A stretch of DNA of 64,000 bases from IMGVR_UViG_3300042308_001511:62001-126000; one strand, 5' to 3'; numbered from the stretch's first letter, positions 1-21,105 are shown. A program made the numbers and translations. Notes: a model not told the origin generated them from the letters alone.

Positions 1-170
1 CCATCCCACGATTTGTAGTCTGGGTGTCTTTGTGGATCATTCTCTTCACACGTTACATATTTCATAGGATTCTCCCAGTCGTAGTATTTTAGTTTTATTT
101 CTCCAGATTTGTCTACGTAGCTGGCTACCAGTTTTTTTGTATGTGTTAGGTATTGTGTCTCTATAAGCAT
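1..170 (-). CDS. N-terminal part of a gene running off the window, possibly a family-B DNA polymerase/exonuclease subunit
   Basis: Not in the ORF track. ATG at 170 reads MLIETQYLTHTKKLVASYVDKSGEIKLKYYDWENPMKYV...YKSWDG, open to the edge, with an AAAC-N17-TATAAA motif upstream. The PolB call rests only on recalled resemblance to huge-phage PolB N-termini; no catalytic motif is visible. Confidence 0.4.
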   Translation of the reverse strand, partial: MLIETQYLTHTKKLVASYVDKSGEIKLKYYDWENPMKYVTCEENDPQRHPDYKSWD

Positions 171-221
171 CTAATTGTGTATTTGTTGTTGTTTATATTT
201 TTGACTTTAACTATGTTTATG

Positions 222-734
222 TTAGAAGTCACAGTCGTAGTAATCCAATATTCCACCATCACTCTTTACGAATATTAGTTCGTCGCGTCTTACAAGTTGA
301 TAATCATAATGCCTTCCTAATTTGAACAGCGTTCTTATGAAAGGTATTCCTTCACCTTCGTTAACTTGTTTTTCTTCTATCATTAGACAAAGTATTTTTC
401 TGTCTTCCTCAGGATTGTAATTAACTACTTCATCTTCATGATCTCTTTCGAGTCCTTTTTTACCATATGTTATGAATGTTGATTCAAGTCTTTCACCACT
501 AGGTGTATACTCTATCCATACGTTGTCACCTATTTTTATATTGACATCTTCATCCTTTAAATAAACCCTTGTCCAGAAGTATACTTTCTCAGGTGTTACT
601 TCTACCTGTATTTCACTTACATCGTCACTCAAATCGGTGGTATCTACATCCTGTAGTTGTTCTCTTACAAAGTCGTAAAGAGATATTGGATCTCCAGACC
701 CAATAATGTATTCCTTTTCAGTACTAGTTTCCAT
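222..734 (-). CDS. hypothetical protein (acidic)
   Basis: 170 aa ORF in a tight minus-strand operon. Confidence 0.7.
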   Translation of the reverse strand: METSTEKEYIIGSGDPISLYDFVREQLQDVDTTDLSDDVSEIQVEVTPEKVYFWTRVYLKDEDVNIKIGDNVWIEYTPSGERLESTFITYGKKGLERDHEDEVVNYNPEEDRKILCLMIEEKQVNEGEGIPFIRTLFKLGRHYDYQLVRRDELIFVKSDGGILDYYDCDF

Positions 735-1008
735 TTTTTTCGTTTGTTTTTTTATATTCTAACCAAGACTCCAAACTTTCGTAGTCTCTTGATTTACCCG
801 CATCAAATGCTGCATTCAATTCTTTATAATTGTATTTTGGTATCGTCTTTGGTATTTCATAATTGTGGTTTCCATTCGACACAAAAGCTTGAAATAGTTT
901 CATCTCCTCATTATATGGTCCATATTTTTCCTCGTTACGGTTGTTTATTTCGATTACGATTTGGTGTGAAGGATTGTTAGGGTCAAGACCCTCGTTCAAT
1001 TTGCTCAT
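724..1008 (-). CDS. hypothetical protein
   Basis: 94 aa ORF overlapping both neighbours. Confidence 0.65.
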   Translation of the reverse strand: MSKLNEGLDPNNPSHQIVIEINNRNEEKYGPYNEEMKLFQAFVSNGNHNYEIPKTIPKYNYKELNAAFDAGKSRDYESLESWLEYKKTNEKNGN

Positions 1009-1571
1009 ATTATCTCGTTTATTTTTTTGTTTCTTACATATGCCTTAGTCCACTCTTCAAGACTCAACACACCGAAGTCTGGATCCTCCACGTTGTGCTC
1101 ACTACGTACAGGTGATCTAGGCAGCAAAGTAGCATACCTATTTTCCTGGTGTCGTATGTATTTGTCATAGTTTATACAATAACCTTTGTCGGTATTGTTG
1201 TTTTTGTCAGTATCCAATAAAAACTCTAAAACAAATACATCACACGGAATACTCCTAATAAGACGTACATACTCTACAAACGGATAGTCATCTATCAGAT
1301 TGTGTATCATAAGACCTTCAACAAATACAAAAGTGTTAGGTTCCTTCTCTACGAGTTCACGGACTAATGTCAATCTTTTTGAGTCCTCAACTATGTCGGT
1401 TGAAAGAGTGAATTTCCACGTGAACTTCGAGTCAGGATATGGCATAACCTTCTGAACTTCTCTATGTGTGAGAAGAATAGATTGGTAGCCAGAGGTTTCA
1501 AGTCTCTTAGTCATCTCGATAAAAAAATAGGTCTGACTATTTGTGTCAAGCTTTATTAGTGTGTTCGGCAT
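1005..1571 (-). CDS. hypothetical protein with C-terminal RxxxIxxI motif
   Basis: 188 aa, ends YVRNKKINEII; AAAC-N18-TATAAT-N4-ATG upstream. Confidence 0.7.
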   Translation of the reverse strand: MPNTLIKLDTNSQTYFFIEMTKRLETSGYQSILLTHREVQKVMPYPDSKFTWKFTLSTDIVEDSKRLTLVRELVEKEPNTFVFVEGLMIHNLIDDYPFVEYVRLIRSIPCDVFVLEFLLDTDKNNNTDKGYCINYDKYIRHQENRYATLLPRSPVRSEHNVEDPDFGVLSLEEWTKAYVRNKKINEII

Positions 1572-1603
1572 GACTATTATAAAGAGTAATCAACGGTAAG
1601 TTT

Positions 1604-2389
1604 TTAGTAGGGACAATACGGAATCCACTTTTCTTCAAACCAGAAAGTTCTTCCGGTGCTATCCTTTACCCCAACTCCTTTTTGGTAGAATACCCACTCA
1701 GAAAAGTCTTTTACATCACCACCGTTAGGATTATGCCAGTCTCTGAGTTGACCTCCATTATATTTGTATGCTTGTAATGGAATATCACAACACATATCGA
1801 GTATGTCTGGTCTTTTGTTTATAACATCTCTGGCTTTATCGAACGGATTTTCACCTAAGTAATAAAGTATAGTCGAACGAAGATAGTTGCCAATTCCATT
1901 AAAGTATTTCTGATCCAACAACGCCTCACAGATTGGTTTGTCGAATACCTTTTTGTGTAGGTTATTTAGTACATTTTCTTTAAAAACATCAAATTCTTTA
2001 GTCGGATCGGGACCTCTTTTTGTCGCAAATCCACCTACTTTATATTTAGGACCCATATAAGATCCATAAAGAAGTAATGAATATCCATCATCTGTATCGA
2101 GTCGGAAACGAACGAACCTGGTATCGTTCCACTTATCGGTAGTAACGAAAGCCCAGTTACCGGACATACCCATAAAAACGTGTACGTTTATCGATTTGTT
2201 CTCACTGTGTAGTCCTATTATAAGTTCTTTACCGAATGATTCCGCACTAACTATAAAGTCACCTTCTATGATGTTTGATTGTGTTGGTATATTACCTTTG
2301 GTAACGTCATATACCGTAGTGTATTTTCGTTTTTGAGACTTCGAGTTAATGAAGTCTGACATAATTTTCAATTCTGCTAATTCTGGCAT
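1604..2389 (-). CDS. nei: Fpg/Nei-family DNA glycosylase/AP lyase, NEIL1-like
   Basis: N-terminal MPE catalytic motif, GKEL, MGMSG, H2TH motif LLDQKYFNGIGNYLRS, and zincless-finger-type GRTFWF with no 4-Cys finger. Confidence 0.9.
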   Translation of the reverse strand: MPELAELKIMSDFINSKSQKRKYTTVYDVTKGNIPTQSNIIEGDFIVSAESFGKELIIGLHSENKSINVHVFMGMSGNWAFVTTDKWNDTRFVRFRLDTDDGYSLLLYGSYMGPKYKVGGFATKRGPDPTKEFDVFKENVLNNLHKKVFDKPICEALLDQKYFNGIGNYLRSTILYYLGENPFDKARDVINKRPDILDMCCDIPLQAYKYNGGQLRDWHNPNGGDVKDFSEWVFYQKGVGVKDSTGRTFWFEEKWIPYCPY

Positions 2390-2433
2390 GAAATAATCTA
2401 TTAGATTATTTATATACTATAATTAGAATCTGT

Positions 2434-3069
2434 TTAGAACTTATAGTTTTTTGTAGGTTTTCTACACTTCACTTGACTTTTTATATTGTTTAGCTCGGTG
2501 TTTCCAATCTCTAACCTTGCATTTTTTCTTTTTAGTACCAACCCTTCAACCATATCTATTTTAGTTATTTCATCATACTTATCTTTGAATTTATTAAGGT
2601 ATGATTTAACCCGGTATACATTTTCTGATACTGAGTAAAGGTATTCGTGTTCTGATGAATTTACACCAAACATTTCGTCAAGTATGTTAGATCTTTGTTC
2701 AAACGTTTTTGTTATTAGGTAGTCACCATCATTTACGAGTATATCGAATATAACCAGTTTGTGATTGAATGTTTTTCCAGTTCCGTCTCTTTTTGATTTA
2801 TTCATATACTCTCCGTTTATTACGGTCCAACCACCAGTGCCTTTATACAATTTTAGTATTTCTTCACTAGGTATCTCGAATTTCGTAAGAGGTTGTGAGT
2901 GTCTATTCATAACCTTTATATTCTTACCATCTGTAAATATTAAACAATTTGAACCATCCAATTTAGGTTGTCCAAACATTGTGTTGTTATCATATGAGTT
3001 CAAATCCAAAGAAGGTATTGCATTCTTCGGTCTTGGAGGATAGATGTATCTATATACTGGATATTTCAT
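2434..3069 (-). CDS. minimal ATP-dependent ligase (nucleotidyltransferase domain only)
   Basis: Motif I QPKLDG, III NGEY, IIIa FDIL, IV EGLVLK, V VKCRK; no OB domain. Confidence 0.8.
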   Translation of the reverse strand: MKYPVYRYIYPPRPKNAIPSLDLNSYDNNTMFGQPKLDGSNCLIFTDGKNIKVMNRHSQPLTKFEIPSEEILKLYKGTGGWTVINGEYMNKSKRDGTGKTFNHKLVIFDILVNDGDYLITKTFEQRSNILDEMFGVNSSEHEYLYSVSENVYRVKSYLNKFKDKYDEITKIDMVEGLVLKRKNARLEIGNTELNNIKSQVKCRKPTKNYKF

Positions 3070-3102
3070 TTGTCTGTTTTTGACAAATGTAAGGAAATTT
3101 TC

Positions 3103-3903
3103 TTATAGATTTATATAAATATGTTTTTCTAAACGTTCTATCAACTCACCTTTTCCGATACTTTTTGGACCTGCTGTATTATTGTGTTCCCATTCTATCG
3201 AATCTATCGCCGATATTAATTTGGGTAAATCTATTTTAGATTTTATAAAATAATGTGATTGTTCTGATTTGTTATCGACTTCTAAGTAGTGTCTACCGGC
3301 ATAAAACCCAACTCTTCTGAATGCAAAGTCGGCTTCTGATTTATTTACAAATTCAAATAGATTGCTAGACTTTTTATAAACCTTTAATTCTCTAAGATAA
3401 TCTAATCTGTTCCATATTTGGAAAACACAAGGTACTTTATATACGTTTCCTTCCAATGTGAAAGAATCATCTGGAAGATCCATCTCGTATATTAAATGAT
3501 ACTCTAATGGTATTTTGTTTTTTATAGTGTCTTTTTTGAAAGACTTTGGAAGTATGAATGCTATAGTTTCTGCACCAATATCTGCAGCTTTTTTCAAAAA
3601 CTTAAGTGCCAGAGTTCCCTGATTACCGAAAGGTGGATTACCGACAACGAGTATTTTACCTGATAAATCCGAAGGATCAAATTCTAACCAATTTTGTTTT
3701 TTGACTCGTTTTGATTCTGGTGCAATATCAAATGATAATAGGTTTGTGTGATTTATCTTTTCTGTGAATGCACCACCTCCGGCAGATGGCTCTATAACGA
3801 CGTCAAAATTATTAAGTTCGATTTTAGAAAGAACATCTAATACGGTTTTTTCTTTTGTGTAGAATTTATCGTTCTCATTTCTTTTGTTACGGTTGTATGC
3901 CAT
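3103..3903 (-). CDS. N6-adenine/N4-cytosine DNA methyltransferase
   Basis: EPSAGGG SAM-binding motif and GNPPF catalytic motif. Confidence 0.85.
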   Translation of the reverse strand: MAYNRNKRNENDKFYTKEKTVLDVLSKIELNNFDVVIEPSAGGGAFTEKINHTNLLSFDIAPESKRVKKQNWLEFDPSDLSGKILVVGNPPFGNQGTLALKFLKKAADIGAETIAFILPKSFKKDTIKNKIPLEYHLIYEMDLPDDSFTLEGNVYKVPCVFQIWNRLDYLRELKVYKKSSNLFEFVNKSEADFAFRRVGFYAGRHYLEVDNKSEQSHYFIKSKIDLPKLISAIDSIEWEHNNTAGPKSIGKGELIERLEKHIYINL

Positions 3904-3965
3904 CTATATTATAGATATATATTCACCAATTTGTTTAGATAAAATAACAAACATTAAATTACTTT

Positions 3966-4148
3966 TTAAATTCCGATAGATACCAAAACATCGTTTCTTT
4001 TCTCGGCCTTTGTTTTCTCGACCGGACGAATCTCGTGGTAGCAGTTGATACAATCGCGAACATATTTCTTAGCATCAGATATGCTCTCAAACTCTCCAAA
4101 TCTGAAGAAATTCGTACTCGTTCCGAGCCAAAGTTCACATTTCTTCTT
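3966..4148 (-). CDS. small hypothetical protein with C-terminal RxxxLxxIGI motif
   Basis: Ends EKRNDVLVSIGI; true start probably MAAKKK (ATG near 4157), so the start coordinate is approximate. Confidence 0.55.
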   Translation of the reverse strand, partial: KKKCELWLGTSTNFFRFGEFESISDAKKYVRDCINCYHEIRPVEKTKAEKRNDVLVSIGI

Positions 4149-4159
4149 AGCCGCCATAA

Positions 4160-4351
4160 TCAGAAAGGTAAGTCGTTTTCGATAGGTTTGAAAATACCAC
4201 ATTTAGACTTCAAATGACAATCAATCTTATTGACCTCATCCATATACTGTTGTGCCTTCCAGTCGTCCATCATTCTCAATAAGTCAACCATTTGTTGATC
4301 ATCAATTGGTCTTTCTAATAAATCGTATGCTATGTTATCAATGTTTGTCAT
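4160..4351 (-). CDS. hypothetical protein
   Basis: 63 aa; TATATTCG box upstream. Confidence 0.5.
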   Translation of the reverse strand: MTNIDNIAYDLLERPIDDQQMVDLLRMMDDWKAQQYMDEVNKIDCHLKSKCGIFKPIENDLPF

Positions 4352-4407
4352 ATCTTTTTCTTTTTACGAATATACGGAACTTTGTATTTCTTTTTAATAT
4401 AAAGTGC

Positions 4408-5025
4408 ATGAGAATTGAGGATTTTTTTGTCGAGGTAAAATCTCCTATATCCTGCCATAGTGGTGGAGCAGAAGGAGCAGACACTGAGTTTGAACTCGGA
4501 TGTGTCAATATGGGAATACCTGTTTATGCATACTCCTGGAAGACGGAAAGACATAAATCACCCAACAAAGTAGAGATTTCATTAGATGATTTCAGAGAAG
4601 GATCTGAAAAAGTTAAGTCTGCTGCAAAAAGTATTGGAAGAAAAGGTGTAGAAAGACACATAAATCTTTTGGCACGTAACTGGGCACAGGTTAAATATTC
4701 TATGCAAGTCTTTGCAGTATCAACTATAGTTGCACCAGGGCATACTGAACCGAAAGGTCGAGTATCCACCGCTAAGAAAGAAATTGTTGCAGGTGGGACA
4801 GGATATGCTGTGGAGATGGCAATATTACACGAAAGAGAAGTATATGTGTTTGATCAGGTAAAGTGTGAATGGTTTGTGTGGTCTTATTCTTCTGAACGCT
4901 TCGTTCCATCTAAAGAACCATTAGTAACCAAACCATTTGCAGGAATTGGTTCTCGGCAGTTAACTCTGGAAGGAACCGAAGCCATAAAATCATTGTTAAA
5001 AAGGAGCTTCAGTTCTACTAAATAG
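4408..5025 (+). CDS. SLOG/DprA-like nucleotide-binding fold protein
   Basis: HSGGAEGAD and GGTGYAV motifs; start reassigned to ATG 4408 after TATAAA-N4. Confidence 0.6.
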   Translation: MRIEDFFVEVKSPISCHSGGAEGADTEFELGCVNMGIPVYAYSWKTERHKSPNKVEISLDDFREGSEKVKSAAKSIGRKGVERHINLLARNWAQVKYSMQVFAVSTIVAPGHTEPKGRVSTAKKEIVAGGTGYAVEMAILHEREVYVFDQVKCEWFVWSYSSERFVPSKEPLVTKPFAGIGSRQLTLEGTEAIKSLLKRSFSSTK

Positions 5026-5028
5026 TAT

Positions 5029-5880
5029 ATGGCAACATTAGTAATATATTCAAACAAAGCATACGAACATATGGTCGACTCATTTTTGGCGTCTAGGTCA
5101 TATGCTGATGCAGAGTCTCATACCGTCGTTTTTTATATGATAGGTTATGATTCCGATATAGAATACCCAAATTTGGTCAAACGTAGGTGGGATCCACCGG
5201 TCGAAAGACAAAACTTTCAATTCTACAAACCACACATAATGTTACAATCATTAGAGTTTGAAGGTGATCTTATATACTTTGACACCGATATACTAATTGG
5301 TAAAAGGTTCAATCCCTCAAAACTGACTACTGAAAAGGATTACCCTATAGCATGTGCGGGTCCTCTAAACTTTGTTTACTATTGGGAGATGCACCAAGAT
5401 GGAACTACCTCACAGTATGACGAATCTATGCTTAAGGAATATCTTGGTGTAAGTGATAGAACAACACACTACCTTTGGACTTCTATGTTGTGTTACAATT
5501 CTTCGTGTAGAGACTTCTTACAGGAGTGGTGTTCTATCGTTGATAATAGTTATTTTCACCGAGACGGAAAGTCCAGACACTATTTCCCATTTGGAGATGA
5601 AACTGCGTTTAACGTTCTTATATGGAAAAGAGGCTACACAGATTTTCTACCAAGATATTTCGTTAACACAACGGTATTCGAAACATTGGTTGAAGTAGAA
5701 AGTGATGACTCCTACAATTACTACCTCGATAACACATTCAATAATCATACTCCACTCTATGAGATATATGAGAGATGTGACGATTCGAGTATTGTTCAGT
5801 TCTACCACGGTATAAAAGATCCAGGTCAAATAATAAAGGTGATGTCTTGGATGATTGTAAACAAAAAATCCTTATATTAG
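5029..5880 (+). CDS. GT-A-fold glycosyltransferase-like protein
   Basis: KP motif, YFDTD (DxD), GDETAFN and C-terminal FYHG, as in GT8/GT77-like enzymes. Confidence 0.6.
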   Translation: MATLVIYSNKAYEHMVDSFLASRSYADAESHTVVFYMIGYDSDIEYPNLVKRRWDPPVERQNFQFYKPHIMLQSLEFEGDLIYFDTDILIGKRFNPSKLTTEKDYPIACAGPLNFVYYWEMHQDGTTSQYDESMLKEYLGVSDRTTHYLWTSMLCYNSSCRDFLQEWCSIVDNSYFHRDGKSRHYFPFGDETAFNVLIWKRGYTDFLPRYFVNTTVFETLVEVESDDSYNYYLDNTFNNHTPLYEIYERCDDSSIVQFYHGIKDPGQIIKVMSWMIVNKKSLY

Positions 5881-5884
5881 CAGT

Positions 5885-7222
5885 ATGGTAAAAGTAGTAG
5901 AAATTGTAAAGATAACAAGACTGGTTCCGGTTTATAAGGACGGTCAAGAAGCGAACTCAATCTCGGTTGCTAAGTTCGAGTTTGCTGATGGAGGTGAATG
6001 TGGGTTCAATGTAATCGCACAGAAAGGTTTGTATGAGATTGGTTCTAAGGCCGTTTACATACAACCAGATTATTGTTTGTCTGATAATGAATTGTTTTCC
6101 AGTTTTATTGCACCTGGTGGTGAACCGAAAAAAAGTAGACTTGGAAAACAAAACAGAATACGTGCAATCAAATTTAACTTCCAATTTGAAGGAAGTAGTG
6201 ATCCAATTTATTCAAATGGTATTCTTATGCCACTTTCAGAAGTAGAAGATTTTCTAAATAATTCGGATCCTGAAAACTATTGTTTTTATAGTGATTTACC
6301 TTCACCGAATGCTTATTCTAAAATAGAAGATATAGAAGATTTGGCAGAGAAACTCGGTGTTACAAAATATGAAGAACCGGAAAGTGCGGGGTCAGGATTG
6401 GCTGCTGGTGAATTCCCTTCATTTATGTATAAAACGGATGAACCGAATGCGCTCAATTTAGTTTCACATATCAAACGTGTAATTGAGGAAGGACAAGAAC
6501 TTGGTATAACAATCAAAAGAGATGGTTCTTCACATACAACATACTTCAAATTAAAAGATGATGAGTGGAAAGTTGGTGTTTGTTCACGTTCTATGGAAAA
6601 GAAGATGGAACAATTACAAACAACTGGATACGTTTCATCAGAGGGTTTAGAGTATAGAAAACACTTTGATCGTGATACTATGACGAAAGGTTGGTTCTGT
6701 GAGACGAACGGTGAGTTTATTACTGATAATATCGCAGAGGAGACACTAACACCTATACAGAAAGAGGTGAAAGACTCCTGGGTAGAACTGGCTAAAAACT
6801 CAGGATTACTCGATAAAGGACTCGAATATTGTAAAGAGTATGGTGTTCAACTAGCATTCCGTGGAGAGATTATAGGACAGGGATTGAAAGGATCAGGAAA
6901 CAAAGTGAATCCAGATGCAAACGAAAAACAAAAACTCGTTCTTTTCGGAATTGATGATTTATCTGAGGGATATTCTAAGAGAATCAACTACTCTTCTCCA
7001 CACAATTTGAGATATGTTGCAAATCTTCTTGGTGTTGAATACACACAGGCACACATCGCGAAGTTTCCGACTTACGAGGCATTGTGTGAATATTGTGAAG
7101 GTATATTTGTGAAAGAGAAAGCAGAAGGAAGAATCATCGAAGGTGTCGTAATACGAACGATGTATACCAACGATTTATCTTGCAAATATATGAACGCGGA
7201 GTATGACAGTCTTAAGAAGTAG
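5885..7222 (+). CDS. RNA ligase, DRB0094/Rnl5-like family
   Basis: N-terminal OB-like domain, KRDGSS (motif I), VCSR, FRGEI, EGVVIR, CKYMNAEY. Confidence 0.85.
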   Translation: MVKVVEIVKITRLVPVYKDGQEANSISVAKFEFADGGECGFNVIAQKGLYEIGSKAVYIQPDYCLSDNELFSSFIAPGGEPKKSRLGKQNRIRAIKFNFQFEGSSDPIYSNGILMPLSEVEDFLNNSDPENYCFYSDLPSPNAYSKIEDIEDLAEKLGVTKYEEPESAGSGLAAGEFPSFMYKTDEPNALNLVSHIKRVIEEGQELGITIKRDGSSHTTYFKLKDDEWKVGVCSRSMEKKMEQLQTTGYVSSEGLEYRKHFDRDTMTKGWFCETNGEFITDNIAEETLTPIQKEVKDSWVELAKNSGLLDKGLEYCKEYGVQLAFRGEIIGQGLKGSGNKVNPDANEKQKLVLFGIDDLSEGYSKRINYSSPHNLRYVANLLGVEYTQAHIAKFPTYEALCEYCEGIFVKEKAEGRIIEGVVIRTMYTNDLSCKYMNAEYDSLKK

Positions 7223-7231
7223 GAGTTATAT

Positions 7232-7477
7232 ATGACAAAGAACGATTTCATAGAGTTGTTGAAGAGCCACGCCGATAACGCTGGCTCTAGTCGTGGAAGA
7301 TTCGTCACCTACGGTCAGAACGAGAACAACTGGTCTTACGTAAGACCTACGGTAGATTGTTTCGAGCCGACCATAAATCTTACTAAAGAGGGTTCTGTTG
7401 AGTATTGGAACTACGGGTCCGAAACTCCGGATGTCTACACATACGAAGATTTTGCAAAGATGTATTACCTTATTTGA
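7232..7477 (+). CDS. hypothetical protein
   Basis: 81 aa ORF in operon. Confidence 0.6.
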   Translation: MTKNDFIELLKSHADNAGSSRGRFVTYGQNENNWSYVRPTVDCFEPTINLTKEGSVEYWNYGSETPDVYTYEDFAKMYYLI

Positions 7478-7499
7478 TTATTATAACTATATTAGCAAT

Positions 7500-7922
7500 A
7501 TGGAAAAAAACTTATACATAGTGAGGGGATTGCCAGGATCCGGTAAGTCAACACTGGCATTATCTTTGGTGTATCACGATTTCCTCGTTTGTGAAGCAGA
7601 TAAATACTTCATTGATAAAGAGACTGGTGAGTACAAGTTCGATGCGAAGTTCATAAAGAACGCACACGATTTTTGTAGAAACACCGTCGAACAATATATG
7701 AAAGATAATCAGGTGAATGATCAATTCTACACCAGGATTGCAGTTTCCAACACATTCACTCAGGAGTGGGAGATGGAGCCATACTTTGAACTTGCTAAGA
7801 AATATGGATACAGGGTTTTTTCAATTGTAGTTGAGAACAGACACGGTGGAAAAGACATACATAATGTTCCGCAAGCAGCATTAGATGCTATGGAGAATAG
7901 ATTTCAGCTTAAGTTGATATGA
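7500..7922 (+). CDS. AAA_33/N4BP2-like P-loop kinase (putative polynucleotide kinase)
   Basis: RGLPGSGKST Walker A, EADKYF, VSNTFTQEWE, HNVP; start moved to ATG 7500. Confidence 0.8.
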   Translation: MEKNLYIVRGLPGSGKSTLALSLVYHDFLVCEADKYFIDKETGEYKFDAKFIKNAHDFCRNTVEQYMKDNQVNDQFYTRIAVSNTFTQEWEMEPYFELAKKYGYRVFSIVVENRHGGKDIHNVPQAALDAMENRFQLKLI

Positions 7923-8359
7923 AACTTGGATTAGATATACACGGTGTAATAGACAAAAAACCAGAGGACTTTGCTTCTCTGGCTTCTGCCGTTATTTGGA
8001 CCGGAGGTGAGGTACATATAATAACCGGTGGTTCGGTGACCGAAGATATGAAAGAGAAGGTCAAAGCCTTTGGTGTTGCTTGGACACATTTCTTCTCGGT
8101 GTATGATTATATGGAATCTATTGATGAGCAACAAGTTGGTGTTATACAGTTTCCAGATGGGACGGTTCAGAAGAAATTCGATCCTGAAAAATGGGATATG
8201 GTAAAGGCCGATTATTGCAAGAGGAATTCAATAGACCTACACATCGATGATACAGATACATATGGTGTTCATTTCAAAACACCATTTATGTTGTTCTCTG
8301 CAAACGACGGAAGTGAGAAAATATCACACGTCGAGATAATGAAATGTTTATGTCCTTAA
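7919..8359 (+). CDS. HAD-superfamily phosphatase-like protein
   Basis: LGLDIHGVI (atypical motif I), ITG, K, HIDD. Confidence 0.65.
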   Translation: MKLGLDIHGVIDKKPEDFASLASAVIWTGGEVHIITGGSVTEDMKEKVKAFGVAWTHFFSVYDYMESIDEQQVGVIQFPDGTVQKKFDPEKWDMVKADYCKRNSIDLHIDDTDTYGVHFKTPFMLFSANDGSEKISHVEIMKCLCP

Positions 8360-10100: not shown

Positions 10101-11327
10101 CTATCCGAAGAAGTCTGCTGCGTCTCCGTCTACGTATCCATCGTTGTTGTCTTCATCATCAGAACCTACAATCTGTTCAAATTCTTTCTCTACTTGCTCA
10201 ATCTCATCGAGTGATTTGAATCTGAAATAATCATTGATAATAGGTGCCATTGAATTTAATACATCTTCTGTGAAAATTTCTGGTGTAAATAATTGTTTGG
10301 TTGTAACTGATTTACCTAAGTGTCTAATATACCATCTCAAGCCACCAGGTGTAAATGTCATCTCACCAGTTTTCTTATCAACTTCCATCTTACCTTTTGC
10401 GATACCGACTTCTTCGAAGAATTCTGGGCGACAGAATCCATCTAAACCAGTGTATGGGTTCATACCATTTACAAAAGAAATATCGAATCTTATTTTCTTT
10501 GGTTTTGCCATACGGTTTTTTGCTGTTTTGAATAAAACGGTAATACCAGATTGTCCTAAATCCATATCATCTTCATTTCCATCTTTAAGTTTCGATTTTG
10601 ACATGAATCCAATTACTGACGCAGAATAAAGTAATCCATTTCCTCCACGTAATTTTTCTTGTGGGTAGAGATCTAAAGTTAGATATGTGTGGTTTGCTAC
10701 AAGTAAAGGAATGTCGAGGTATCCTAAATCTGTGTTTATAGAACGGAACATAGATCCGAGAGCCTTTGCTTTGGTCATATCCTGTTTGATGTCACCTTTC
10801 AATAAATCCTCTTTCTCTTTGTTTGATGCCATCTGTCCTAATGAATCTAAAACTAACATAATTTTAGGTATTTCGTATCCTGCTAACTTCTGTTGTTTGA
10901 GTTCATCAACTAATTGAGTGAGTGTGATATTAACGTCCTCTACTTTGTTCGATCTTATTAGTCTTAGTTTTTCAAGTGAATTATCAACACCAAATTTAGG
11001 AAAGTCTTCAAGGTCAATTGCCTGTTCTGTGTCGATGTAGATGACGAAGTAACCTAACTTCTGTGCCTGCTTAACACATGAGTAACAGAGGAAAGATTTA
11101 CCTGATCCAGATTCACCAGCAAATGCAGTTATACGGTTTGTTGCGATACCACCACCTAATAACTTTCCTGATAGTGCCGCATCGAGGAGGTAAACACCTG
11201 TTGATATGAATGTCTTTTCTTTAATCTCTTTCTCTACAACGATTGGAACTGATTTAGCGATATTATCTAATATTCCTCCTATTTTACTAATCTCAAATTT
11301 TTTTATTTCTTTTGCTTGTTTTGCCAT
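10101..11327 (-). CDS. uvsX: RecA-like recombinase (UvsX type)
   Basis: ISTG, AGESGSGKS Walker A, YIDTE, LVLDS Walker B, VANHTY, GG...YSAS, KNR; acidic tail. Confidence 0.93.
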   Translation of the reverse strand: MAKQAKEIKKFEISKIGGILDNIAKSVPIVVEKEIKEKTFISTGVYLLDAALSGKLLGGGIATNRITAFAGESGSGKSFLCYSCVKQAQKLGYFVIYIDTEQAIDLEDFPKFGVDNSLEKLRLIRSNKVEDVNITLTQLVDELKQQKLAGYEIPKIMLVLDSLGQMASNKEKEDLLKGDIKQDMTKAKALGSMFRSINTDLGYLDIPLLVANHTYLTLDLYPQEKLRGGNGLLYSASVIGFMSKSKLKDGNEDDMDLGQSGITVLFKTAKNRMAKPKKIRFDISFVNGMNPYTGLDGFCRPEFFEEVGIAKGKMEVDKKTGEMTFTPGGLRWYIRHLGKSVTTKQLFTPEIFTEDVLNSMAPIINDYFRFKSLDEIEQVEKEFEQIVGSDDEDNNDGYVDGDAADFFG

Positions 11328-11407: not shown

Positions 11408-11935
11408 TTATTTGAGATTGAACTTAGCACCGACCCACGACCAGTTATCTGTGTCTTTCAGGTCTTCGGTGATTTCTGTTTGTGTCGTTTCACCTCTCTC
11501 TGTACCGATAAGGCATTCGAGTTCGATGTTGTCACATTGGTACTTAAGGTACTCCTCAATGCCCTCCATTATAGGCCACAACTCTTTCAGGTCTATACCA
11601 TCGTAATCTTCTGATGTGTCTAATATGATTGCTATGTTCCACTTACTCGCAATTCCTACTAGTGATCTTCTTCCGTCTATCTGTGCAGAGTATGTCTCGT
11701 ACTTAAATCTGTCACCGTTTGGATCAATGTCTTGTAACTGTACCCTTACGAACTCGTCGAGTTCTTCGAGTTGTTCCTGTATCTGTTTCTCCTTCGTCAC
11801 ACGCCAATCTCTGAGTGCGTCGGCCCTCTCGTCTTTATTCGCCTTGTCACTATGTCTCATCTTGTAGGCAGCGTTGGCCAAGGTCTCTGGACTTAGTTCT
11901 TCGTTGAACTTCTGATATCCTTTAAGTTTTCTCAT
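11408..11935 (-). CDS. putative head-internal virion protein
   Basis: Starts MRKLKGYQKFNEE. Confidence 0.6.
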   Translation of the reverse strand: MRKLKGYQKFNEELSPETLANAAYKMRHSDKANKDERADALRDWRVTKEKQIQEQLEELDEFVRVQLQDIDPNGDRFKYETYSAQIDGRRSLVGIASKWNIAIILDTSEDYDGIDLKELWPIMEGIEEYLKYQCDNIELECLIGTERGETTQTEITEDLKDTDNWSWVGAKFNLK

Positions 11936-11936
11936 C

Positions 11937-12383
11937 TTAGTAGTTTCTTTTGTCGTCGCCTCCACCCATATTCGTCAGTCCTATACCGATTAACGTAGAT
12001 ATTATTCCTACTATTACGAATAGTGGTTGGTTGTTAAATCCACCGTATATCATTGATCCCAATCCTCCTAATAATGTGGTTAATATTGATCCAAGTCCCA
12101 GGAAGGCACCTATTTTATCAAGACGTGAACTTTCGTTGATGATGGACTCGCCGATCATCTTCTCTGCCGTCTCAGGGTTCTCTGCCAGTTTGTCGAGTTT
12201 ACTCTTTGCACTTTCAAGCCTTGCTCTTTGTTCTGTTGTTAGCTTCTCTATTTTGTGTGCCACCTCGTCGATTATCTCAGGATTCTCGGATATGTATTCT
12301 TTGGCCATCTCCTGTCCTTTTCTGAAGTTCTCTTTAGCCTTATTGAAGTAGAAGAACTCGTTTATGCTCTTTACGTGTTTCAT
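11937..12383 (-). CDS. putative virion protein with two C-terminal hydrophobic segments
   Basis: Starts MKHVKSINEFF; internal IINES; Gly-rich hydrophobic helices. Confidence 0.65.
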   Translation of the reverse strand: MKHVKSINEFFYFNKAKENFRKGQEMAKEYISENPEIIDEVAHKIEKLTTEQRARLESAKSKLDKLAENPETAEKMIGESIINESSRLDKIGAFLGLGSILTTLLGGLGSMIYGGFNNQPLFVIVGIISTLIGIGLTNMGGGDDKRNY

Positions 12384-12390
12384 CTTATTT

Positions 12391-13257
12391 TTAATTTTTT
12401 TCGTTTATGGACATTATTACCTTTATCGTCAACTTGTTTCCTAGCACACTACTTATTGTACAAGACTCAGTCATCTCTAGCTTGACTTCTGGATACTCGT
12501 CCTGTGTTCGCTGGCATGCTATGTATATCTCCTCTACGAAGTCAGTCCTTTTTTTGAAGTCCTCGTATAAATTCTCGGGTTTTGTGTACGTGACTGATCT
12601 CATACCGTCGTTCACCCACTCGCCGGTTTTTATAGTGAAATTGTAAATGACGGACTTCTTGTAAATAGTTGGTCGGTAATCTCTCGTTACATCGAAACGA
12701 TCTTCTATCTCTGCATCGGACATAAGGTCAGCAAAGGCCATCTCCTGTGGTAGGTAGTCACCATTGGTGAAGTTGGTGAACTTCTCGTCAAATTTCTTTA
12801 TTCTCATAACGTATATATTATTTTGTTTTGATATACTTTCGAATGTCATTATTCTTTCCATAGTGACTCTCGGTTCGACAAAGACGAAGTCCTGTGTACC
12901 TGATTGTACAATTTCCAGTTTGGCACCTGGTTGATTCGGATCTTCCATACAGTACATCAGAGGTCCCCAAGGTCCTTTCACCTTTCCAATCTCGTTACAT
13001 ATCTGCATAAACTCATGCACTATTGGTTCGATACCTTCCAGTTCACCCCAGTTTATTCCAACCATTACCAGTCCATCGCCTTTGTTGTATTGGAACTTCC
13101 TGAGTAGGAACGGTATTACGTTGTATTCCAGGTTGAATCCTTCCAGTTCTCTTTCGAGTGACTCTTGTGTTGCGTTATCCCAGTCTATTAAGGAAACTAT
13201 GGCACCTGTATCTCGTAGTTCCTGTGCTCTTTCGTCTATTTCTTCGATTATGCTCAT
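12391..13257 (-). CDS. putative virion protein(s); probable internal start at 12807
   Basis: In-frame TAATATATA-N4-ATG giving MRIKKFDEKF. Confidence 0.6.
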   Translation of the reverse strand: MSIIEEIDERAQELRDTGAIVSLIDWDNATQESLERELEGFNLEYNVIPFLLRKFQYNKGDGLVMVGINWGELEGIEPIVHEFMQICNEIGKVKGPWGPLMYCMEDPNQPGAKLEIVQSGTQDFVFVEPRVTMERIMTFESISKQNNIYVMRIKKFDEKFTNFTNGDYLPQEMAFADLMSDAEIEDRFDVTRDYRPTIYKKSVIYNFTIKTGEWVNDGMRSVTYTKPENLYEDFKKRTDFVEEIYIACQRTQDEYPEVKLEMTESCTISSVLGNKLTIKVIMSINEKN

Positions 13258-14276
13258 TTCTTACACCATTTTATTGTTATTTCCAGGAAGCCGTCAGGAT
13301 AATTCTTTTGTGCATATTCGAGTACTGCGTAGACGTCATCGCCACTTCTTCCACTTATATTTTCCTGGAACCAGAACTCATTGAACGGATCTGAAAGTAT
13401 AGACAACAGGTTTGACTTACATCTCATCACGTTTATAGAGATCCAGTTACCTTCGTCTTCGAGGGTACGACATGTGTCGATTATCCTTTCTAAAAGGTCG
13501 TTCTCGGAGTGTAGTGTCCAACTAAGATGGTTTACGTCCATTGTCGTCTCGTGTCTGGTGAACGGATTAGTTGGTCTGATTGATATGGCATTTACGTTGT
13601 TATCCAAATTTTTGTCCCAGTGTGATTTTAACTGTTTAACTTCTACTTCTCCTTTGAATTCGTCGAACAATGAAGTGATGTCATTATCATGACTATTGCT
13701 CTCGTTGACGTGCTCCTTCCCGTGCTCCTCGATGAAGTCGTTTATTATGTCCACTATTACCATAGACATGTTCGGCACGTCGTATATGTCTTTGTTGCAG
13801 TCTGCCAGGTTGTTGTCCTCCATATCGTAGACGCTGCCGCTTTCGGATGAGTAGTAGACTATGTCGGTAGCGAAGTTCGATGTGTCTGATGTGAGTTCTA
13901 GTAGGTATCTTTCCATGCTGGTCTCGTTACGGAACTGGTATTCCAATGTCTGTTCGACCGATTCCAGGTCCCAGTTTCCGCTGTCCCATCTGTTTAGTAC
14001 GTATATCTCCTCTGCGGTGCTCTTCCCGGTCACTCCCTTTTTGGTGCCCTTCGGCTTTCTCTGTATAATCACGACGTGCTTGCCCTTGTGATAGTCCTCC
14101 CACTCGTGGATGTCGTCGTTTATGCACCACTGGCATTTGTTTGCGTACTTCCTGAGTGCGGTGTGTGTCAGTGGCATAACGACTATTATGTCATCGTTCC
14201 TGAACACGTCGAGTCTTTCCGACCTCTTCACACGTCCCTCGTTGAGAATCTCACCGTATTTCTTCAGGTATCTCAT
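13254..14276 (-). CDS. putative head-internal virion protein
   Basis: Starts MRYLKKYGEILNEG; internal VNES. Confidence 0.65.
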   Translation of the reverse strand: MRYLKKYGEILNEGRVKRSERLDVFRNDDIIVVMPLTHTALRKYANKCQWCINDDIHEWEDYHKGKHVVIIQRKPKGTKKGVTGKSTAEEIYVLNRWDSGNWDLESVEQTLEYQFRNETSMERYLLELTSDTSNFATDIVYYSSESGSVYDMEDNNLADCNKDIYDVPNMSMVIVDIINDFIEEHGKEHVNESNSHDNDITSLFDEFKGEVEVKQLKSHWDKNLDNNVNAISIRPTNPFTRHETTMDVNHLSWTLHSENDLLERIIDTCRTLEDEGNWISINVMRCKSNLLSILSDPFNEFWFQENISGRSGDDVYAVLEYAQKNYPDGFLEITIKWCKK

Positions 14277-20202: not shown

Positions 20203-21105
20203 ATGAATGTACTATCACTATTCGATGGAATGTCCTGTGGACAAATCGCACTATCCAGACTCGGTAAAAAAGTAGATAAATACTACGCCTCCGAGGTCGA
20301 TAAACAAGCAATCTCTATAACACTTAAGAACTTTCCTGATACATTACAATTAGGTAGTGTCATTGATGTAGACTCTAAGAATCTACCAAAGATTGATTTA
20401 CTTATAGGTGGAAGTCCTTGTCAATCATTCACCTTTGCCGGTAAGAGAAAGGGTATGAGTACAAAATGTAAAGTTGATATACTAACACTCGAACAATATC
20501 TCGAAATGAAAAAAAGTAATTTTGAGTTCGAAGGTGAATCATACTTATTCTGGGAATATGTCAGACTTCTTACCGAACTTAAACCAAAGTATTTTCTATT
20601 AGAAAATGTTAAGATGGAATCGAGATGGAAGACTTTAATCTCAAAGACCTTAGGTGTAGAACCTATATTCATCAATAGTAACGTATTTGGTCCACAGAAC
20701 AGGCAGAGACTTTACTGGACTAACATACCGGTTGATGAAATACCTACGTACAACGATGCTGTAATTGGTGACGTTCTCGTAGATGATTCTGAAATCATTC
20801 CAAAATTTTACCTAACTGCTAAACATCATGCTGCATTTTTGAAGAGTTATAAATGGAAACACAATCCAATTGATACCAAATCAAAACCTTTGCTAGCATC
20901 CTATCATAAACAACCACCACACTGTCCTTATGTTCCATGTAAGGATAGTGATAGTGGATTCCGTAGACTTCTTCCGATTGAGTGTGAGAGATTACAGGGT
21001 GTTTCCGATGGTTACACTGAAGGTGTAAGTGACACACAAAGATATAGAATGCTTGGAAATGGCTGGACCGTTCCAGTTATTATGCATATATTCAAAAATA
21101 TATAA
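20203..21105 (+). CDS. DNA (cytosine-5) methyltransferase
   Basis: SLFDG, GGSPCQ, LENV, QNRQRLYW, ERLQ, GNGW motifs. Confidence 0.93.
   Translation: MNVLSLFDGMSCGQIALSRLGKKVDKYYASEVDKQAISITLKNFPDTLQLGSVIDVDSKNLPKIDLLIGGSPCQSFTFAGKRKGMSTKCKVDILTLEQYLEMKKSNFEFEGESYLFWEYVRLLTELKPKYFLLENVKMESRWKTLISKTLGVEPIFINSNVFGPQNRQRLYWTNIPVDEIPTYNDAVIGDVLVDDSEIIPKFYLTAKHHAAFLKSYKWKHNPIDTKSKPLLASYHKQPPHCPYVPCKDSDSGFRRLLPIECERLQGVSDGYTEGVSDTQRYRMLGNGWTVPVIMHIFKNI

What the first reader, a model, noticed from the sequence alone, without database searches (positions are those of the whole stretch)
1604..2389. Phage glycosylase resembling metazoan NEIL1 rather than bacterial Fpg/Nei
Seen in sequence: RGPD...FKENVLNNLHKKVFDKPICEALLDQKYFNGIGNYLRSTILY.LGENPFDKARDV and DSTGRTFWF. 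From memory, human NEIL1 reads FRENVLRNLADKAFDRPICEALLDQRFFNGIGNYLRAEILY...PPFEKARSV and DRHGRTIWF, which is very close and includes the zincless finger. Inference: possible gene exchange between jumbo phages and the eukaryotic NEIL1 lineage, relevant to the origin of NEIL1.
Basis: partly seen in the sequence, partly recalled or inferred. Interest (0 to 1): 0.75.

Follow-up and report, generated by a model that had tools for sequence, protein, structure and literature searches.

The report
NEIL1-like DNA glycosylase in freshwater jumbo phage
A large uncultured freshwater phage carries an intact DNA-repair glycosylase that is clearly of the animal NEIL1 type, not the bacterial Fpg/Nei type; it belongs to a large phage gene family missing from the papers and catalogued virus genomes I searched, but the data cannot say whether the gene passed from phages to eukaryotes or the other way.

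Summary
Window 1604-2389 (minus strand) is an intact 261-aa ORF. Its best solved-structure match is human NEIL1 (E about 1e-28, against 1e-9 for E. coli Nei). Its AlphaFold model (pLDDT 95.5) matches NEIL1 crystal structures at TM about 0.81. P2, E3, K54, M75 and the finger arginine R247 are conserved. The finger region has no Cys4 zinc site.

The host record is a 344-kb tailed jumbo phage found in lake and river metagenomes, not a giant eukaryotic virus. The gene belongs to a large family: 931 cluster representatives in the protein library, at least 360 IMG/VR contigs (many with a phage terminase), and chromosomal copies in Poribacteria MAGs. GenBank phage records and UniProt viral proteins hold no close member.

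In ML trees the phage, bacterial-MAG and eukaryotic NEIL1-like sequences form one clade apart from bacterial Fpg/Nei (100/100). The root inside that clade is unstable. One tree nests eukaryotes within phages; another nests phages within eukaryotes. AU tests reject neither alternative (p 0.07 and 0.25). An old link between phage and eukaryotic NEIL1 is supported; a recent exchange is not (identity 42% at most), and the direction is open.

The query's own clade has replaced the conserved RRF void-filling loop. The most likely function is base excision repair of oxidised bases in phage DNA.

The parts
1604..2389 (-). NEIL1-like Fpg/Nei DNA glycosylase/AP lyase gene, 261 aa. The stop codon is at 1604-1606.
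   Evidence: ORF. Pfam Fapy_DNA_glyco plus H2TH. Human NEIL1 is the best PDB match by sequence and by fold. AF2 pLDDT is 95.5.
2072..2389 (-). N-terminal beta-sandwich catalytic domain (residues 1-106). It holds Pro2 (codon 2384-2386), Glu3 (2381-2383), Lys54 (2228-2230) and Met75 (human M81 equivalent, 2165-2167).
   Evidence: PF01149 scores 34.9 bits, over its cut-off. P2, E3 and K54 are invariant in all 101 aligned rows. The human M81 position is M in 94 of 101 rows and L in the other 7.
2042..2065 (-). Remodelled void-filling (intercalation) loop, residues 109-116, sequence GSYMGPKY. It stands where NEIL1 and nearly all relatives have D-x-R-R-F-x-x-W (human R118, R119, F120).
   Evidence: Column counts. 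In the query clade, 10/10 rows have Y or F at the human R118 site and 10/10 have G at the F120 site. Other phage-like rows have R in 57/58 and F in 58/58. Human numbering comes from the alignment.
1811..2014 (-). Helix-two-turn-helix DNA-binding domain (residues 126-193). This is the stretch most similar to NEIL1.
   Evidence: PF06831 scores 28.6 bits, below its 34.7-bit cut-off. 38 of 56 residues are identical to human NEIL1. Q160, N164, G165, G167, N168, Y169 and R171 are conserved.
1625..1687 (-). Zincless finger (residues about 235-255). It is a beta-hairpin carrying Arg247 (codon 1649-1651), the equivalent of human NEIL1 Arg277. There is no Cys4 zinc site.
   Evidence: The phmmer second domain aligns DSTGRTFWF to DRHGRTIWF. 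DSSP gives strands 239-242 and 248-251. R247 is R in 100 of the 101 aligned rows, and the remaining row, a eukaryotic one, has a gap there. The only cysteine in the C-terminal 50 residues is C259.
2434..3069 (-). Context only: a small (211 aa) ATP-dependent DNA/RNA ligase-like nucleotidyltransferase directly upstream on the same strand.
   Evidence: PF01068 at 54.3 bits and phrog_114. It is absent from the flanks of related phages, so no conserved link to the glycosylase is shown.
3103..3903 (-). Context only: a methyltransferase-like gene (266 aa) upstream on the same strand.
   Evidence: phrog_5172 at 212.7 bits and phrog_799 DNA methyltransferase. Not conserved next to the glycosylase in relatives.
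1005..1571 (-). Context only: a downstream ORF (188 aa) of unknown function. It is present or absent in natural populations.
   Evidence: No Pfam or PHROG match. One lake metagenome has a contig joining 1026 to 1575. Among related loci it was found only in L038.
222..734 (-). Context only: a 170-aa ORF of unknown function, the only neighbour conserved in synteny with the glycosylase.
   Evidence: tblastn finds it about 2-3.5 kb downstream of the glycosylase gene in 25 related loci. No PHROG match.

Best explanation
The gene encodes a functional bifunctional DNA glycosylase/AP lyase of the Fpg/Nei superfamily, NEIL1 type. Pro2 is the amine nucleophile. Glu3 and Lys54 form the active site. An H2TH motif and a zincless beta-hairpin finger, whose Arg247 binds the lesion phosphate, hold the DNA. 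The host is a roughly 344-kb tailed freshwater jumbo phage. The gene is a stable member of that phage lineage and part of a large old family spread through uncultured large phages, with chromosomal copies in Poribacteria. Inferred mechanism: the enzyme flips out and excises oxidised or ring-opened bases from phage DNA during infection, such as thymine glycol, 5-hydroxyuracil, hydantoins and Fapy lesions, and then cleaves the abasic site by beta,delta-elimination. Other phage repair and recombination genes (UvdE, UvsX-like, DprA-like, ligases) and host 3'-end-cleaning enzymes would finish the repair. Shown here: homology, fold, conserved catalytic residues, phage origin, family size, the separate clade from bacterial Fpg/Nei, and the remodelled loop. 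Inferred: enzymatic activity, substrates and biological role. Evolutionary statement: phage and eukaryotic NEIL1-like genes share one ancestor to the exclusion of sampled bacterial Fpg/Nei. The split is old and its direction is unresolved.
For: Intact ORF. Pfam N-terminal and H2TH domains. Human NEIL1 is the top PDB sequence match by 19 orders of magnitude over E. coli Nei. AF2 model pLDDT 95.5, pTM 0.91. The top 50 Foldseek PDB hits are all human NEIL1 at TM about 0.8. In Swiss-Prot AFDB, human and mouse NEIL1 score E 1e-22 against Fpg at 1e-14. P2, E3 and K54 are invariant in all 101 aligned rows, R247 is R in 100 (the other row has a gap there), and the M75 position is M in 94 and L in 7. 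Phage nature: baseplate wedge, tail spike, virion proteins, T4-type topoisomerase II, NAD ligase and RNR. Terminase_6N is found in near-complete relatives and in 14 of the 46 fragmentary contigs searched with it. No NCLDV capsid was found. Family size: 1490 word-indexed hits, 931 representatives of 50% clusters, and 360-388 IMG/VR contigs. Conservation of 52-77% across the query clade, with synteny to orf222-734, implies purifying selection. Repair context: UvsX-like and DprA-like genes lie nearby. UvdE is in the same genome and lies directly upstream of the NEIL1-like gene in 8 of 172 related loci. The superclade has 100/100 support in two careful trees. Contigs from one freshwater metatranscriptome cover 908-2362 and nothing else in window 1-5000.
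Against: No biochemical data exist. The query itself does not reach Pfam PF09292 (Neil1-DNA_bind) even at E<=1, although 23 of 41 family members do. Its H2TH score is below the Pfam cut-off. The two void-filling residues R118 and F120, conserved in NEIL1 and in nearly all relatives, are replaced in the query clade, so lesion handling or opposite-base handling may differ. No 3'-phosphatase (PNK3P) or Xth/Nfo AP endonuclease was found in the phage, so a complete phage-encoded BER pathway is not shown. The neighbouring ligase is not conserved in relatives. The RNA-library signal may come from contaminating DNA (one search says so).
Confidence: 0.75

Rival explanations
1. Eukaryotic NEIL1 descends from the phage or bacterial NEIL1-like gene pool, so the transfer ran from phage or bacterium to an early eukaryote.
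For: In the 101-row careful tree rooted on 14 bacterial Fpg/Nei sequences, all 19 eukaryote-like rows form one clade (100/99). That clade sits inside the phage-like radiation, with branch support 95/83. Phage-like diversity is far larger than eukaryotic diversity in the library. The short, tail-less, insert-less form is shared by the phage rows and the bacterial outgroups.
Against: The AU test does not reject a single phage-like clade (p 0.07). Adding 13 phage rows flips the root. The outgroup branch is long (about 2 substitutions per site), so long-branch attraction is likely.
Confidence: 0.3
2. The phage family descends from an early eukaryotic NEIL1, so the transfer ran from eukaryote to bacterium or phage and was followed by spread among phages.
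For: In the 114-row careful tree, 81 phage-like rows form one clade (98/99). That clade is sister to the euglenozoan-plus-metazoan group (97/90), with Amoebozoa branching earlier. Poribacteria have chromosomal copies. From general knowledge, their best-known members are sponge symbionts rich in eukaryote-like proteins.
Against: The AU test does not reject eukaryote monophyly (p 0.25). The other careful tree gives the opposite nesting. The Poribacteria copies nest among phage-like rows, not next to eukaryotes. Gene flow from eukaryotes into phages of bacteria is rare.
Confidence: 0.25
3. A recent horizontal transfer between an animal (metazoan NEIL1) and this jumbo phage lineage.
For: There is striking local identity in the H2TH segment, about two thirds of residues.
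Against: Overall identity to metazoan NEIL1 is only about 30-33%. The query sits in a 100/100 clade of phage sequences far from metazoan rows. No IMG/VR contig exceeds 37-42% identity to eukaryotic NEIL1. The phage protein lacks the metazoan insert between the H2TH and the finger, and lacks the C-terminal tail.
Confidence: 0.02
4. The enzyme does not repair phage DNA. It acts offensively or in counter-defence, for example by nicking host DNA at particular bases, or by removing damaged or modified bases that host defences introduce or recognise.
For: DNA glycosylases do take part in phage-host conflict: overexpressed Fpg gave weak phage-specific protection in one study (bioRxiv 10.1101/2025.10.29.685425, read). 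The phage carries several DNA methyltransferases, so phage and host DNA may differ chemically. The remodelled void-filling loop in the query clade could reflect a changed target.
Against: The catalytic and DNA-binding residues are those of the repair enzymes. The gene is linked to UvdE in several lineages. It lies among recombination and repair genes. No defence or anti-defence neighbours were seen.
Confidence: 0.1

Closest known systems
Human/metazoan NEIL1 (endonuclease VIII-like 1; PDB 1TDH, 5ITQ-5ITY, 6LWA-6LWR)
   Same: Same three-part fold at TM about 0.81. Same Pro2/Glu3/Lys54 active site, Met81 equivalent and H2TH motif (38 of 56 residues identical). Same zincless finger with the Arg277 equivalent. 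Best match by sequence and by structure.
   Different: Only about 30-33% identical overall. It lacks the roughly 100-residue disordered C-terminal tail and the metazoan insert between the H2TH and the finger. R118 and F120 are replaced by Y111 and G113. The lesion-recognition loop reads GGQLRDW where human NEIL1 has GG(K/R)GY. It lies outside the eukaryotic rows in both trees.
E. coli endonuclease VIII (Nei) and actinobacterial Nei/Nei2
   Same: Same superfamily, fold and N-terminal PE catalytic dyad. Similar size (263 aa).
   Different: Nei has a Cys4 zinc finger, which is absent here. Sequence match is only E 1e-9. NCBIfam NF007763 scores 62.9 bits against a cut-off of 252. A 100/100 branch separates it in the trees.
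Mimivirus MvNei1 (L315, described as a 'viral NEIL1 ortholog') and MvNei2 (L720), and other NCLDV Fpg-like proteins
   Same: Virus-encoded Fpg/Nei glycosylases. PMC3188539 (read) describes them as having zincless fingers.
   Different: They are much more distant from the query than human NEIL1 is. L720 scores E 2e-3, and no chain named for L315 appears among the 38 PDB matches at E<=1. NCLDV Fpg models in BFVD are 16-19% identical. The present gene is in a tailed phage of bacteria, not a giant virus of eukaryotes.
Bacillus phage G gp292
   Same: The only Fpg/Nei-fold protein from a cultured phage that the searches found. It is also from a jumbo phage.
   Different: 21-26% identical, with partial coverage. 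It is not a member of the NEIL1-like family.

Membership tests
Fpg/Nei (H2TH) DNA glycosylase superfamily | N-terminal beta-sandwich domain plus H2TH domain plus C-terminal finger | tested here: met
   PF01149 scores 34.9 bits, over its cut-off. PF06831 scores 28.6 bits, under its cut-off. The AF2 model matches Fpg/Nei/NEIL1 structures over about 250-270 residues.
Fpg/Nei (H2TH) DNA glycosylase superfamily | N-terminal Pro (after Met removal) as nucleophile, adjacent Glu, and conserved Lys in the beta-sandwich | tested here: met
   The protein starts MPELAE. P2, E3 and K54 are invariant in 101/101 aligned rows.
Fpg/Nei (H2TH) DNA glycosylase superfamily | Glycosylase and beta,delta AP-lyase activity | not testable with these tools
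   This needs enzyme assays.
NEIL1 (endonuclease VIII-like 1) | Zincless finger: a beta-hairpin without Cys4 that carries the essential Arg (human R277) | tested here: met
   DSTGRTFWF aligns with DRHGRTIWF. Strands 239-242 and 248-251 flank R247. The tail has a single Cys. R247 is R in 100 of 101 aligned rows, the other having a gap.
NEIL1 (endonuclease VIII-like 1) | Closer to NEIL1 than to any other Fpg/Nei subfamily by sequence and structure | tested here: met
   Sequence E 1e-28 against 1e-9 or weaker for all others. Foldseek E 1e-22 against 1e-14.
NEIL1 (endonuclease VIII-like 1) | Placement inside the clade of eukaryotic NEIL1 orthologues | tested here: not met
   The query sits in a 100/100 phage clade. 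It shares a superclade with eukaryotic NEIL1 (100/100) but lies outside the eukaryotic rows in both careful trees. It is therefore NEIL1-like, not a NEIL1 orthologue in the strict sense.
NEIL1 (endonuclease VIII-like 1) | Void-filling triad Met81, Arg118, Phe120 | tested here: not met
   Met is conserved (M75). The Arg118 position is Y111 and the Phe120 position is G113, a change shared by all 10 rows of the query clade.
NEIL1 (endonuclease VIII-like 1) | Pfam Neil1-DNA_bind domain (PF09292) | tested here: inconclusive
   Not reported for the query at E<=1, but matched by 23 of 41 aligned family members, best E 1.6e-19.
NEIL1 (endonuclease VIII-like 1) | Disordered C-terminal interaction tail of about 100 residues | tested here: not met
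   The protein ends 10 residues after the finger, at 261 aa.
Bacterial endonuclease VIII (Nei) | Cys4 zinc finger and the NCBIfam equivalog score | tested here: not met
   No CxxC...CxxC motif. NF007763 scores 62.9 bits against a cut-off of 252.
Bacterial Fpg/MutM | Zinc finger, TIGR00577 equivalog score, placement in the Fpg clade | tested here: not met
   TIGR00577 scores 47.5 bits against a cut-off of 203.3. It is separated from Fpg rows at 100/100.

The most novel reading that the evidence does not exclude
The NEIL1 lineage of eukaryotes, animals included, originated by capture of a glycosylase gene from the large-phage or bacterial NEIL1-like pool. The freshwater and marine phage radiation found here would then be the ancestral reservoir of the zincless-finger NEIL1 design.
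Probability: 0.3. Interest if true: 0.8.

Novelty: new member of a known kind. Interest (0 to 1): 0.55.

Why it matters
NEIL1 is a much-studied human repair enzyme whose evolutionary origin is unclear. The family phylogeny I could read (PMC3188539) treats it as a metazoan clade, with mimivirus enzymes as the only viral relatives. This finding has three consequences. First, the nearest non-eukaryotic relatives of NEIL1 are a large, diverse and unstudied family in uncultured large phages, with copies in Poribacteria, and they are much closer to NEIL1 than the mimivirus enzymes are. Second, NEIL1-type genes also occur in Amoebozoa and a euglenozoan. Third, the origin of NEIL1 becomes testable with better-rooted phylogenies. 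In practice, the small tail-less phage enzymes are natural minimal NEIL1 scaffolds. A whole clade has naturally swapped the R118/F120 void-filling loop, which gives a ready-made experiment on how that loop sets lesion and opposite-base specificity. For phage biology, this adds oxidative-base excision repair, sometimes paired with UvdE, to the self-maintenance genes of large aquatic phages.

Tried and rejected
1. Giant eukaryotic virus instead of phage. Pfam Capsid_NCLDV was not found in the own record or in 57 related records. This negative is weak, because the control genomes contain no NCLDV. Positive phage markers were found instead. T4 Gp23 capsid and Terminase_6N were not found in the own record, which is 91% complete; relatives do have the terminase.

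2. Identifying the phage by DNA. Megablast of window 1-8000 against GenBank phages found nothing. A protein search there gave only 25-28% matches.

3. A conserved glycosylase-ligase repair cassette. Rejected: the ligase-like and methyltransferase-like neighbours are absent next to the gene in 85 related loci.

4. A complete phage BER set. PNK3P, Nfo and Xth families were not found. Only UvdE was found.

5. The origin of the deepest 'short' lineages. P0182, P0141 and P0223 sit on contigs of 1-2 kb, which say nothing. P0149 sits on a phage-like contig with HNH, UvdE and SmpB genes.

I took them from plasmid and chromid records instead.

7. Rooting. A quick tree and two careful trees disagree on the root. 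I therefore do not claim a direction.

8. Literature. No paper on phage-encoded NEIL1/Nei was found in five searches. The library lacks most subscription journals, so this is not proof of absence.

Full report
OBSERVATION

Window 1604-2389 on the minus strand is an uninterrupted ATG-initiated ORF of 261 aa that begins MPELAELK. A phmmer search of all PDB chains puts about 15 distinct human NEIL1 sequences first, at E 9e-29 to 3e-27. E. coli endonuclease VIII follows at 1.3e-9, Arabidopsis Fpg at 1e-3, mimivirus L720 at 2e-3 and NEIL3 at 7e-3. Bacterial Fpg scores 0.05 or weaker.

In the H2TH stretch I count 38 identical residues of 56. A second aligned segment pairs DSTGRTFWF with the NEIL1 zincless-finger sequence DRHGRTIWF. 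Pfam finds the Fpg/Nei N-terminal domain above its cut-off and the H2TH domain just below it. NCBIfam equivalogs for Nei and Fpg are matched far below their cut-offs.

STRUCTURE AND CATALYTIC RESIDUES

An AlphaFold2 model built on a 41-sequence alignment has mean pLDDT 95.5 and pTM 0.91. The best 50 Foldseek matches in the PDB are all human NEIL1, at TM about 0.8 and 29-33% identity. In Swiss-Prot AFDB, human and mouse NEIL1 (E 1e-22) lead bacterial Fpg (E 1e-14).

I took human numbering from the alignment. On that basis P2, E3 and K54 match NEIL1 directly, M75 corresponds to human M81, and R247 corresponds to human R277. P2, E3 and K54 are invariant in all 101 aligned rows. R247 is R in 100 of them, and the one remaining row, a eukaryotic one, has a gap there. 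The M75 position is M in 94 rows and L in the other 7. The finger is a beta-hairpin (strands 239-242 and 248-251), and only one cysteine lies nearby, so it cannot be a Cys4 zinc finger.

One difference stands out. In NEIL1, in 57-58 of 58 other phage-like rows and in most Fpg, the loop D-x-R-R-F-x-x-W supplies the void-filling Arg118 and Phe120. In all 10 members of the query's own clade that loop reads G-x-Y-M-G-P-K-Y.

There are three further differences. The protein lacks the metazoan insert between the H2TH and the finger. It lacks the long C-terminal tail. The query itself does not reach Pfam PF09292 (Neil1-DNA_bind), although 23 of 41 aligned relatives do.

WHAT GENOME THIS IS

The window is bases 62001-126000 of a 344,083-bp IMG/VR virus record that CheckV rates 91% complete. 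Its large ORFs match PHROG families for the following:
- a baseplate wedge subunit, a tail spike and virion structural proteins;
- a T4-type topoisomerase II large subunit and an NAD-dependent ligase;
- a ribonucleotide reductase and several homing endonucleases.

Close relatives of 385-476 kb carry a phage Terminase_6N and weak tail-sheath matches. No NCLDV capsid was detected, though this is a weak negative because the control genomes hold no NCLDV. The record is therefore a tailed jumbo phage.

Near-identical DNA occurs in lake, river and freshwater metagenomes from at least 13 studies. Contigs from one freshwater metatranscriptome cover 908-2362, which is the glycosylase and the ORF downstream of it, and nothing else in window 1-5000. 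This fits transcription but does not prove it.

THE FAMILY

The word-indexed protein search gives 1490 hits. The best 120 are all 260-276 aa and 61-96% identical, and JGI already labels many of them 'endonuclease VIII-like 1'. The exhaustive search of 50% cluster representatives gives 931 hits at E<=1e-3 and 67 at E<=1e-30.

A scan of IMG/VR finds 360 contigs, or 388 when seeded with eukaryotic sequences. CheckV estimates imply genomes of about 180-290 kb for many of these. Terminase_6N is on 14 of the 46 fragmentary contigs searched with that family (3 of 19, 11 of 27).

Only 11 loci turn up among the representative genomes of 185,579 prokaryote species, and all are in MAGs. Seven of those MAGs are Candidatus Poribacteria. 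In one of them (L033) the gene is flanked by sulfatases, an RlmL-type methyltransferase, a YkuD transpeptidase and a GFO/IDH oxidoreductase, which looks like a real bacterial chromosome.

Catalogued viruses hold no close member. GenBank phage records give only 25-28% matches, such as Bacillus phage G gp292. BFVD gives gp292 at 21% and NCLDV Fpg at 16-19%. Named eukaryotic members include crab, tuatara and oyster NEIL1. They also include the amoebozoans Mastigella, Endostelium and Pelomyxa, and the euglenozoan Ploeotia. One member is an intron-containing gene in a eukaryotic assembly, flanked by kinase, KIN17 and COX16 genes.

PHYLOGENY

I built the outgroup from 14 bacterial sequences:
- E. 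coli and Klebsiella Nei;
- five actinobacterial Nei/Nei2;
- five Fpg from Proteobacteria and Bacillota;
- two Fpg from the phylum of the Poribacteria MAG.

In a careful IQ-TREE analysis of 101 rows (LG+C20+F+G4 PMSF), all NEIL1-like rows separate from the outgroup at 100/100. The query sits in a 100/99 clade of 10 phage rows. The 19 eukaryote-like rows form one clade (100/99) that is nested among phage-like rows (95/83). The AU test of the alternative, all phage-like rows as one clade, gives p 0.07.

I then added the 13 IMG/VR sequences most similar to eukaryotic NEIL1 and repeated the careful analysis with 114 rows. The root moved. Now 81 phage-like rows form one clade (98/99) and the eukaryotes are paraphyletic, with Amoebozoa branching first. 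The AU test of eukaryote monophyly gives p 0.25.

Some results are robust. The NEIL1-like superclade is real and excludes the sampled bacterial Fpg/Nei. The query belongs to a phage clade. No phage-to-eukaryote pair exceeds 37-42% identity. The polarity is not robust, because the long outgroup branch attaches at different places with different sampling.

A recent exchange is excluded. The donor cannot be named.

LIKELY FUNCTION

The gene lies on the minus strand in a run of same-strand genes. Going upstream, these are a small ATP-dependent ligase-like gene and a methyltransferase-like gene. Going downstream, there are three ORFs of unknown function. A DprA-like gene, an RNA ligase, a UvsX-like recombinase and a C5 cytosine methylase lie within 20 kb.

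The immediate neighbours are not conserved in relatives. Only the 170-aa ORF at 222-734 keeps synteny, in 25 loci. The genome also encodes UvdE. In 8 of 172 related loci a UvdE gene ends just upstream of the NEIL1-like gene. No PNK-type 3'-phosphatase, Nfo or Xth was found.

The best-supported reading is a working bifunctional glycosylase/AP lyase that removes oxidised bases from phage DNA in oxic, sunlit water. End-cleaning would be left to host enzymes or to unrecognised phage proteins. Activity, substrates and role are inferred, not shown. The remodelled void-filling loop suggests that the query clade handles the extruded-base gap or the opposite base differently from NEIL1. An offensive or counter-defence role is possible but has little support.

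NOVELTY AND SCORE

The enzyme type is well known, and automatic pipelines already call such genes 'endonuclease VIII-like 1'. I therefore file it as a new member of a known kind. I found four points undescribed in the searchable literature, which omits most subscription journals:
- a large phage-borne NEIL1-like family;
- its chromosomal presence in Poribacteria;
- a relation to eukaryotic NEIL1 closer than that of the mimivirus 'NEIL1 orthologue';
- the clade-specific loop replacement.

Interest is 0.55. The find is solid and useful for NEIL1 evolution and enzymology. Its most exciting reading, a phage origin of eukaryotic NEIL1, is not decided by the present data.

Noticed in passing
window 2042-2065 (residues 109-116 of the glycosylase): All 10 members of the query's phage clade have GxYMGPKY where nearly every other family member, NEIL1 and most Fpg have DxRRFxxW, the void-filling Arg and Phe. 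It is a natural loop swap in an otherwise conserved enzyme.
   Followed up: partly
L033 6001-6813, and L029, L030, L032, L034, L035, L036: Candidatus Poribacteria MAGs carry NEIL1-like genes. In the one locus I examined (L033) the flanks are ordinary chromosomal genes (sulfatases, RlmL, YkuD, GFO/IDH). These are the only convincing cellular prokaryotic copies among 185,579 species representatives.
   Followed up: partly
window 1026-1575: One lake metagenome (run X2) has a contig that joins 1026 to 1575 with 8 other letters between. Some natural variants therefore lack the 188-aa ORF at 1005-1571.
   Followed up: no
window 2434-3069 (-): A very small (211 aa) ATP-dependent ligase-like nucleotidyltransferase sits next to the glycosylase. 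The same phage also encodes a full NAD-dependent ligase (G000 11546-13426). The small gene is absent from the flanks in relatives.
   Followed up: partly
G000:C1 127767-129575, 132671-134443 and 189534-191453 (outside the window): There are three paralogous ORFs of about 600 aa that match homing/HNH endonuclease PHROGs (phrog_3339 and phrog_559). No terminase was detected in this record although relatives have one. The terminase may lie in the missing 9% or may be interrupted.
   Followed up: no
window 31802-33922 (+): A 706-aa ATP-dependent protease with AAA+ ATPase matches (phrog_4871, 769.6 bits).
   Followed up: no
window 20203-21105 (+), 3103-3903 (-), 42613-44565 (+): The window holds a C5 cytosine DNA methylase (PF00145, 134 bits) and two further methyltransferase-like genes. 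The phage DNA may be methylated.
   Followed up: no
window 10101-11327 (-) and 4252-5025 (+): A UvsX/RecA-like recombinase and a DprA-like recombination mediator lie within 10 kb of the glycosylase.
   Followed up: no
L129 7040-7954, L027 5074-5955, L161, L176, L179, L188, L196, L217; own genome G000:C1 144891-145697: A UvdE UV-damage endonuclease gene lies next to the NEIL1-like gene in 8 of 172 related loci, ending just upstream of it in at least seven (downstream in L129). In the window's own genome it is present about 80 kb away.
   Followed up: partly
L022 and L023 (contigs of 587 kb and 591 kb): Relatives 63-66% identical sit on contigs of nearly 600 kb that also encode aminoacyl-tRNA synthetase fragments, DHFR, thymidylate synthase and a family B DNA polymerase. 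The family therefore reaches into the largest phage-like genomes.
   Followed up: no
P0216 (350 aa, origin unknown): This long sequence groups with eukaryotes in one careful tree and inside the phage-like clade in the other. Its source organism was not determined.
   Followed up: no
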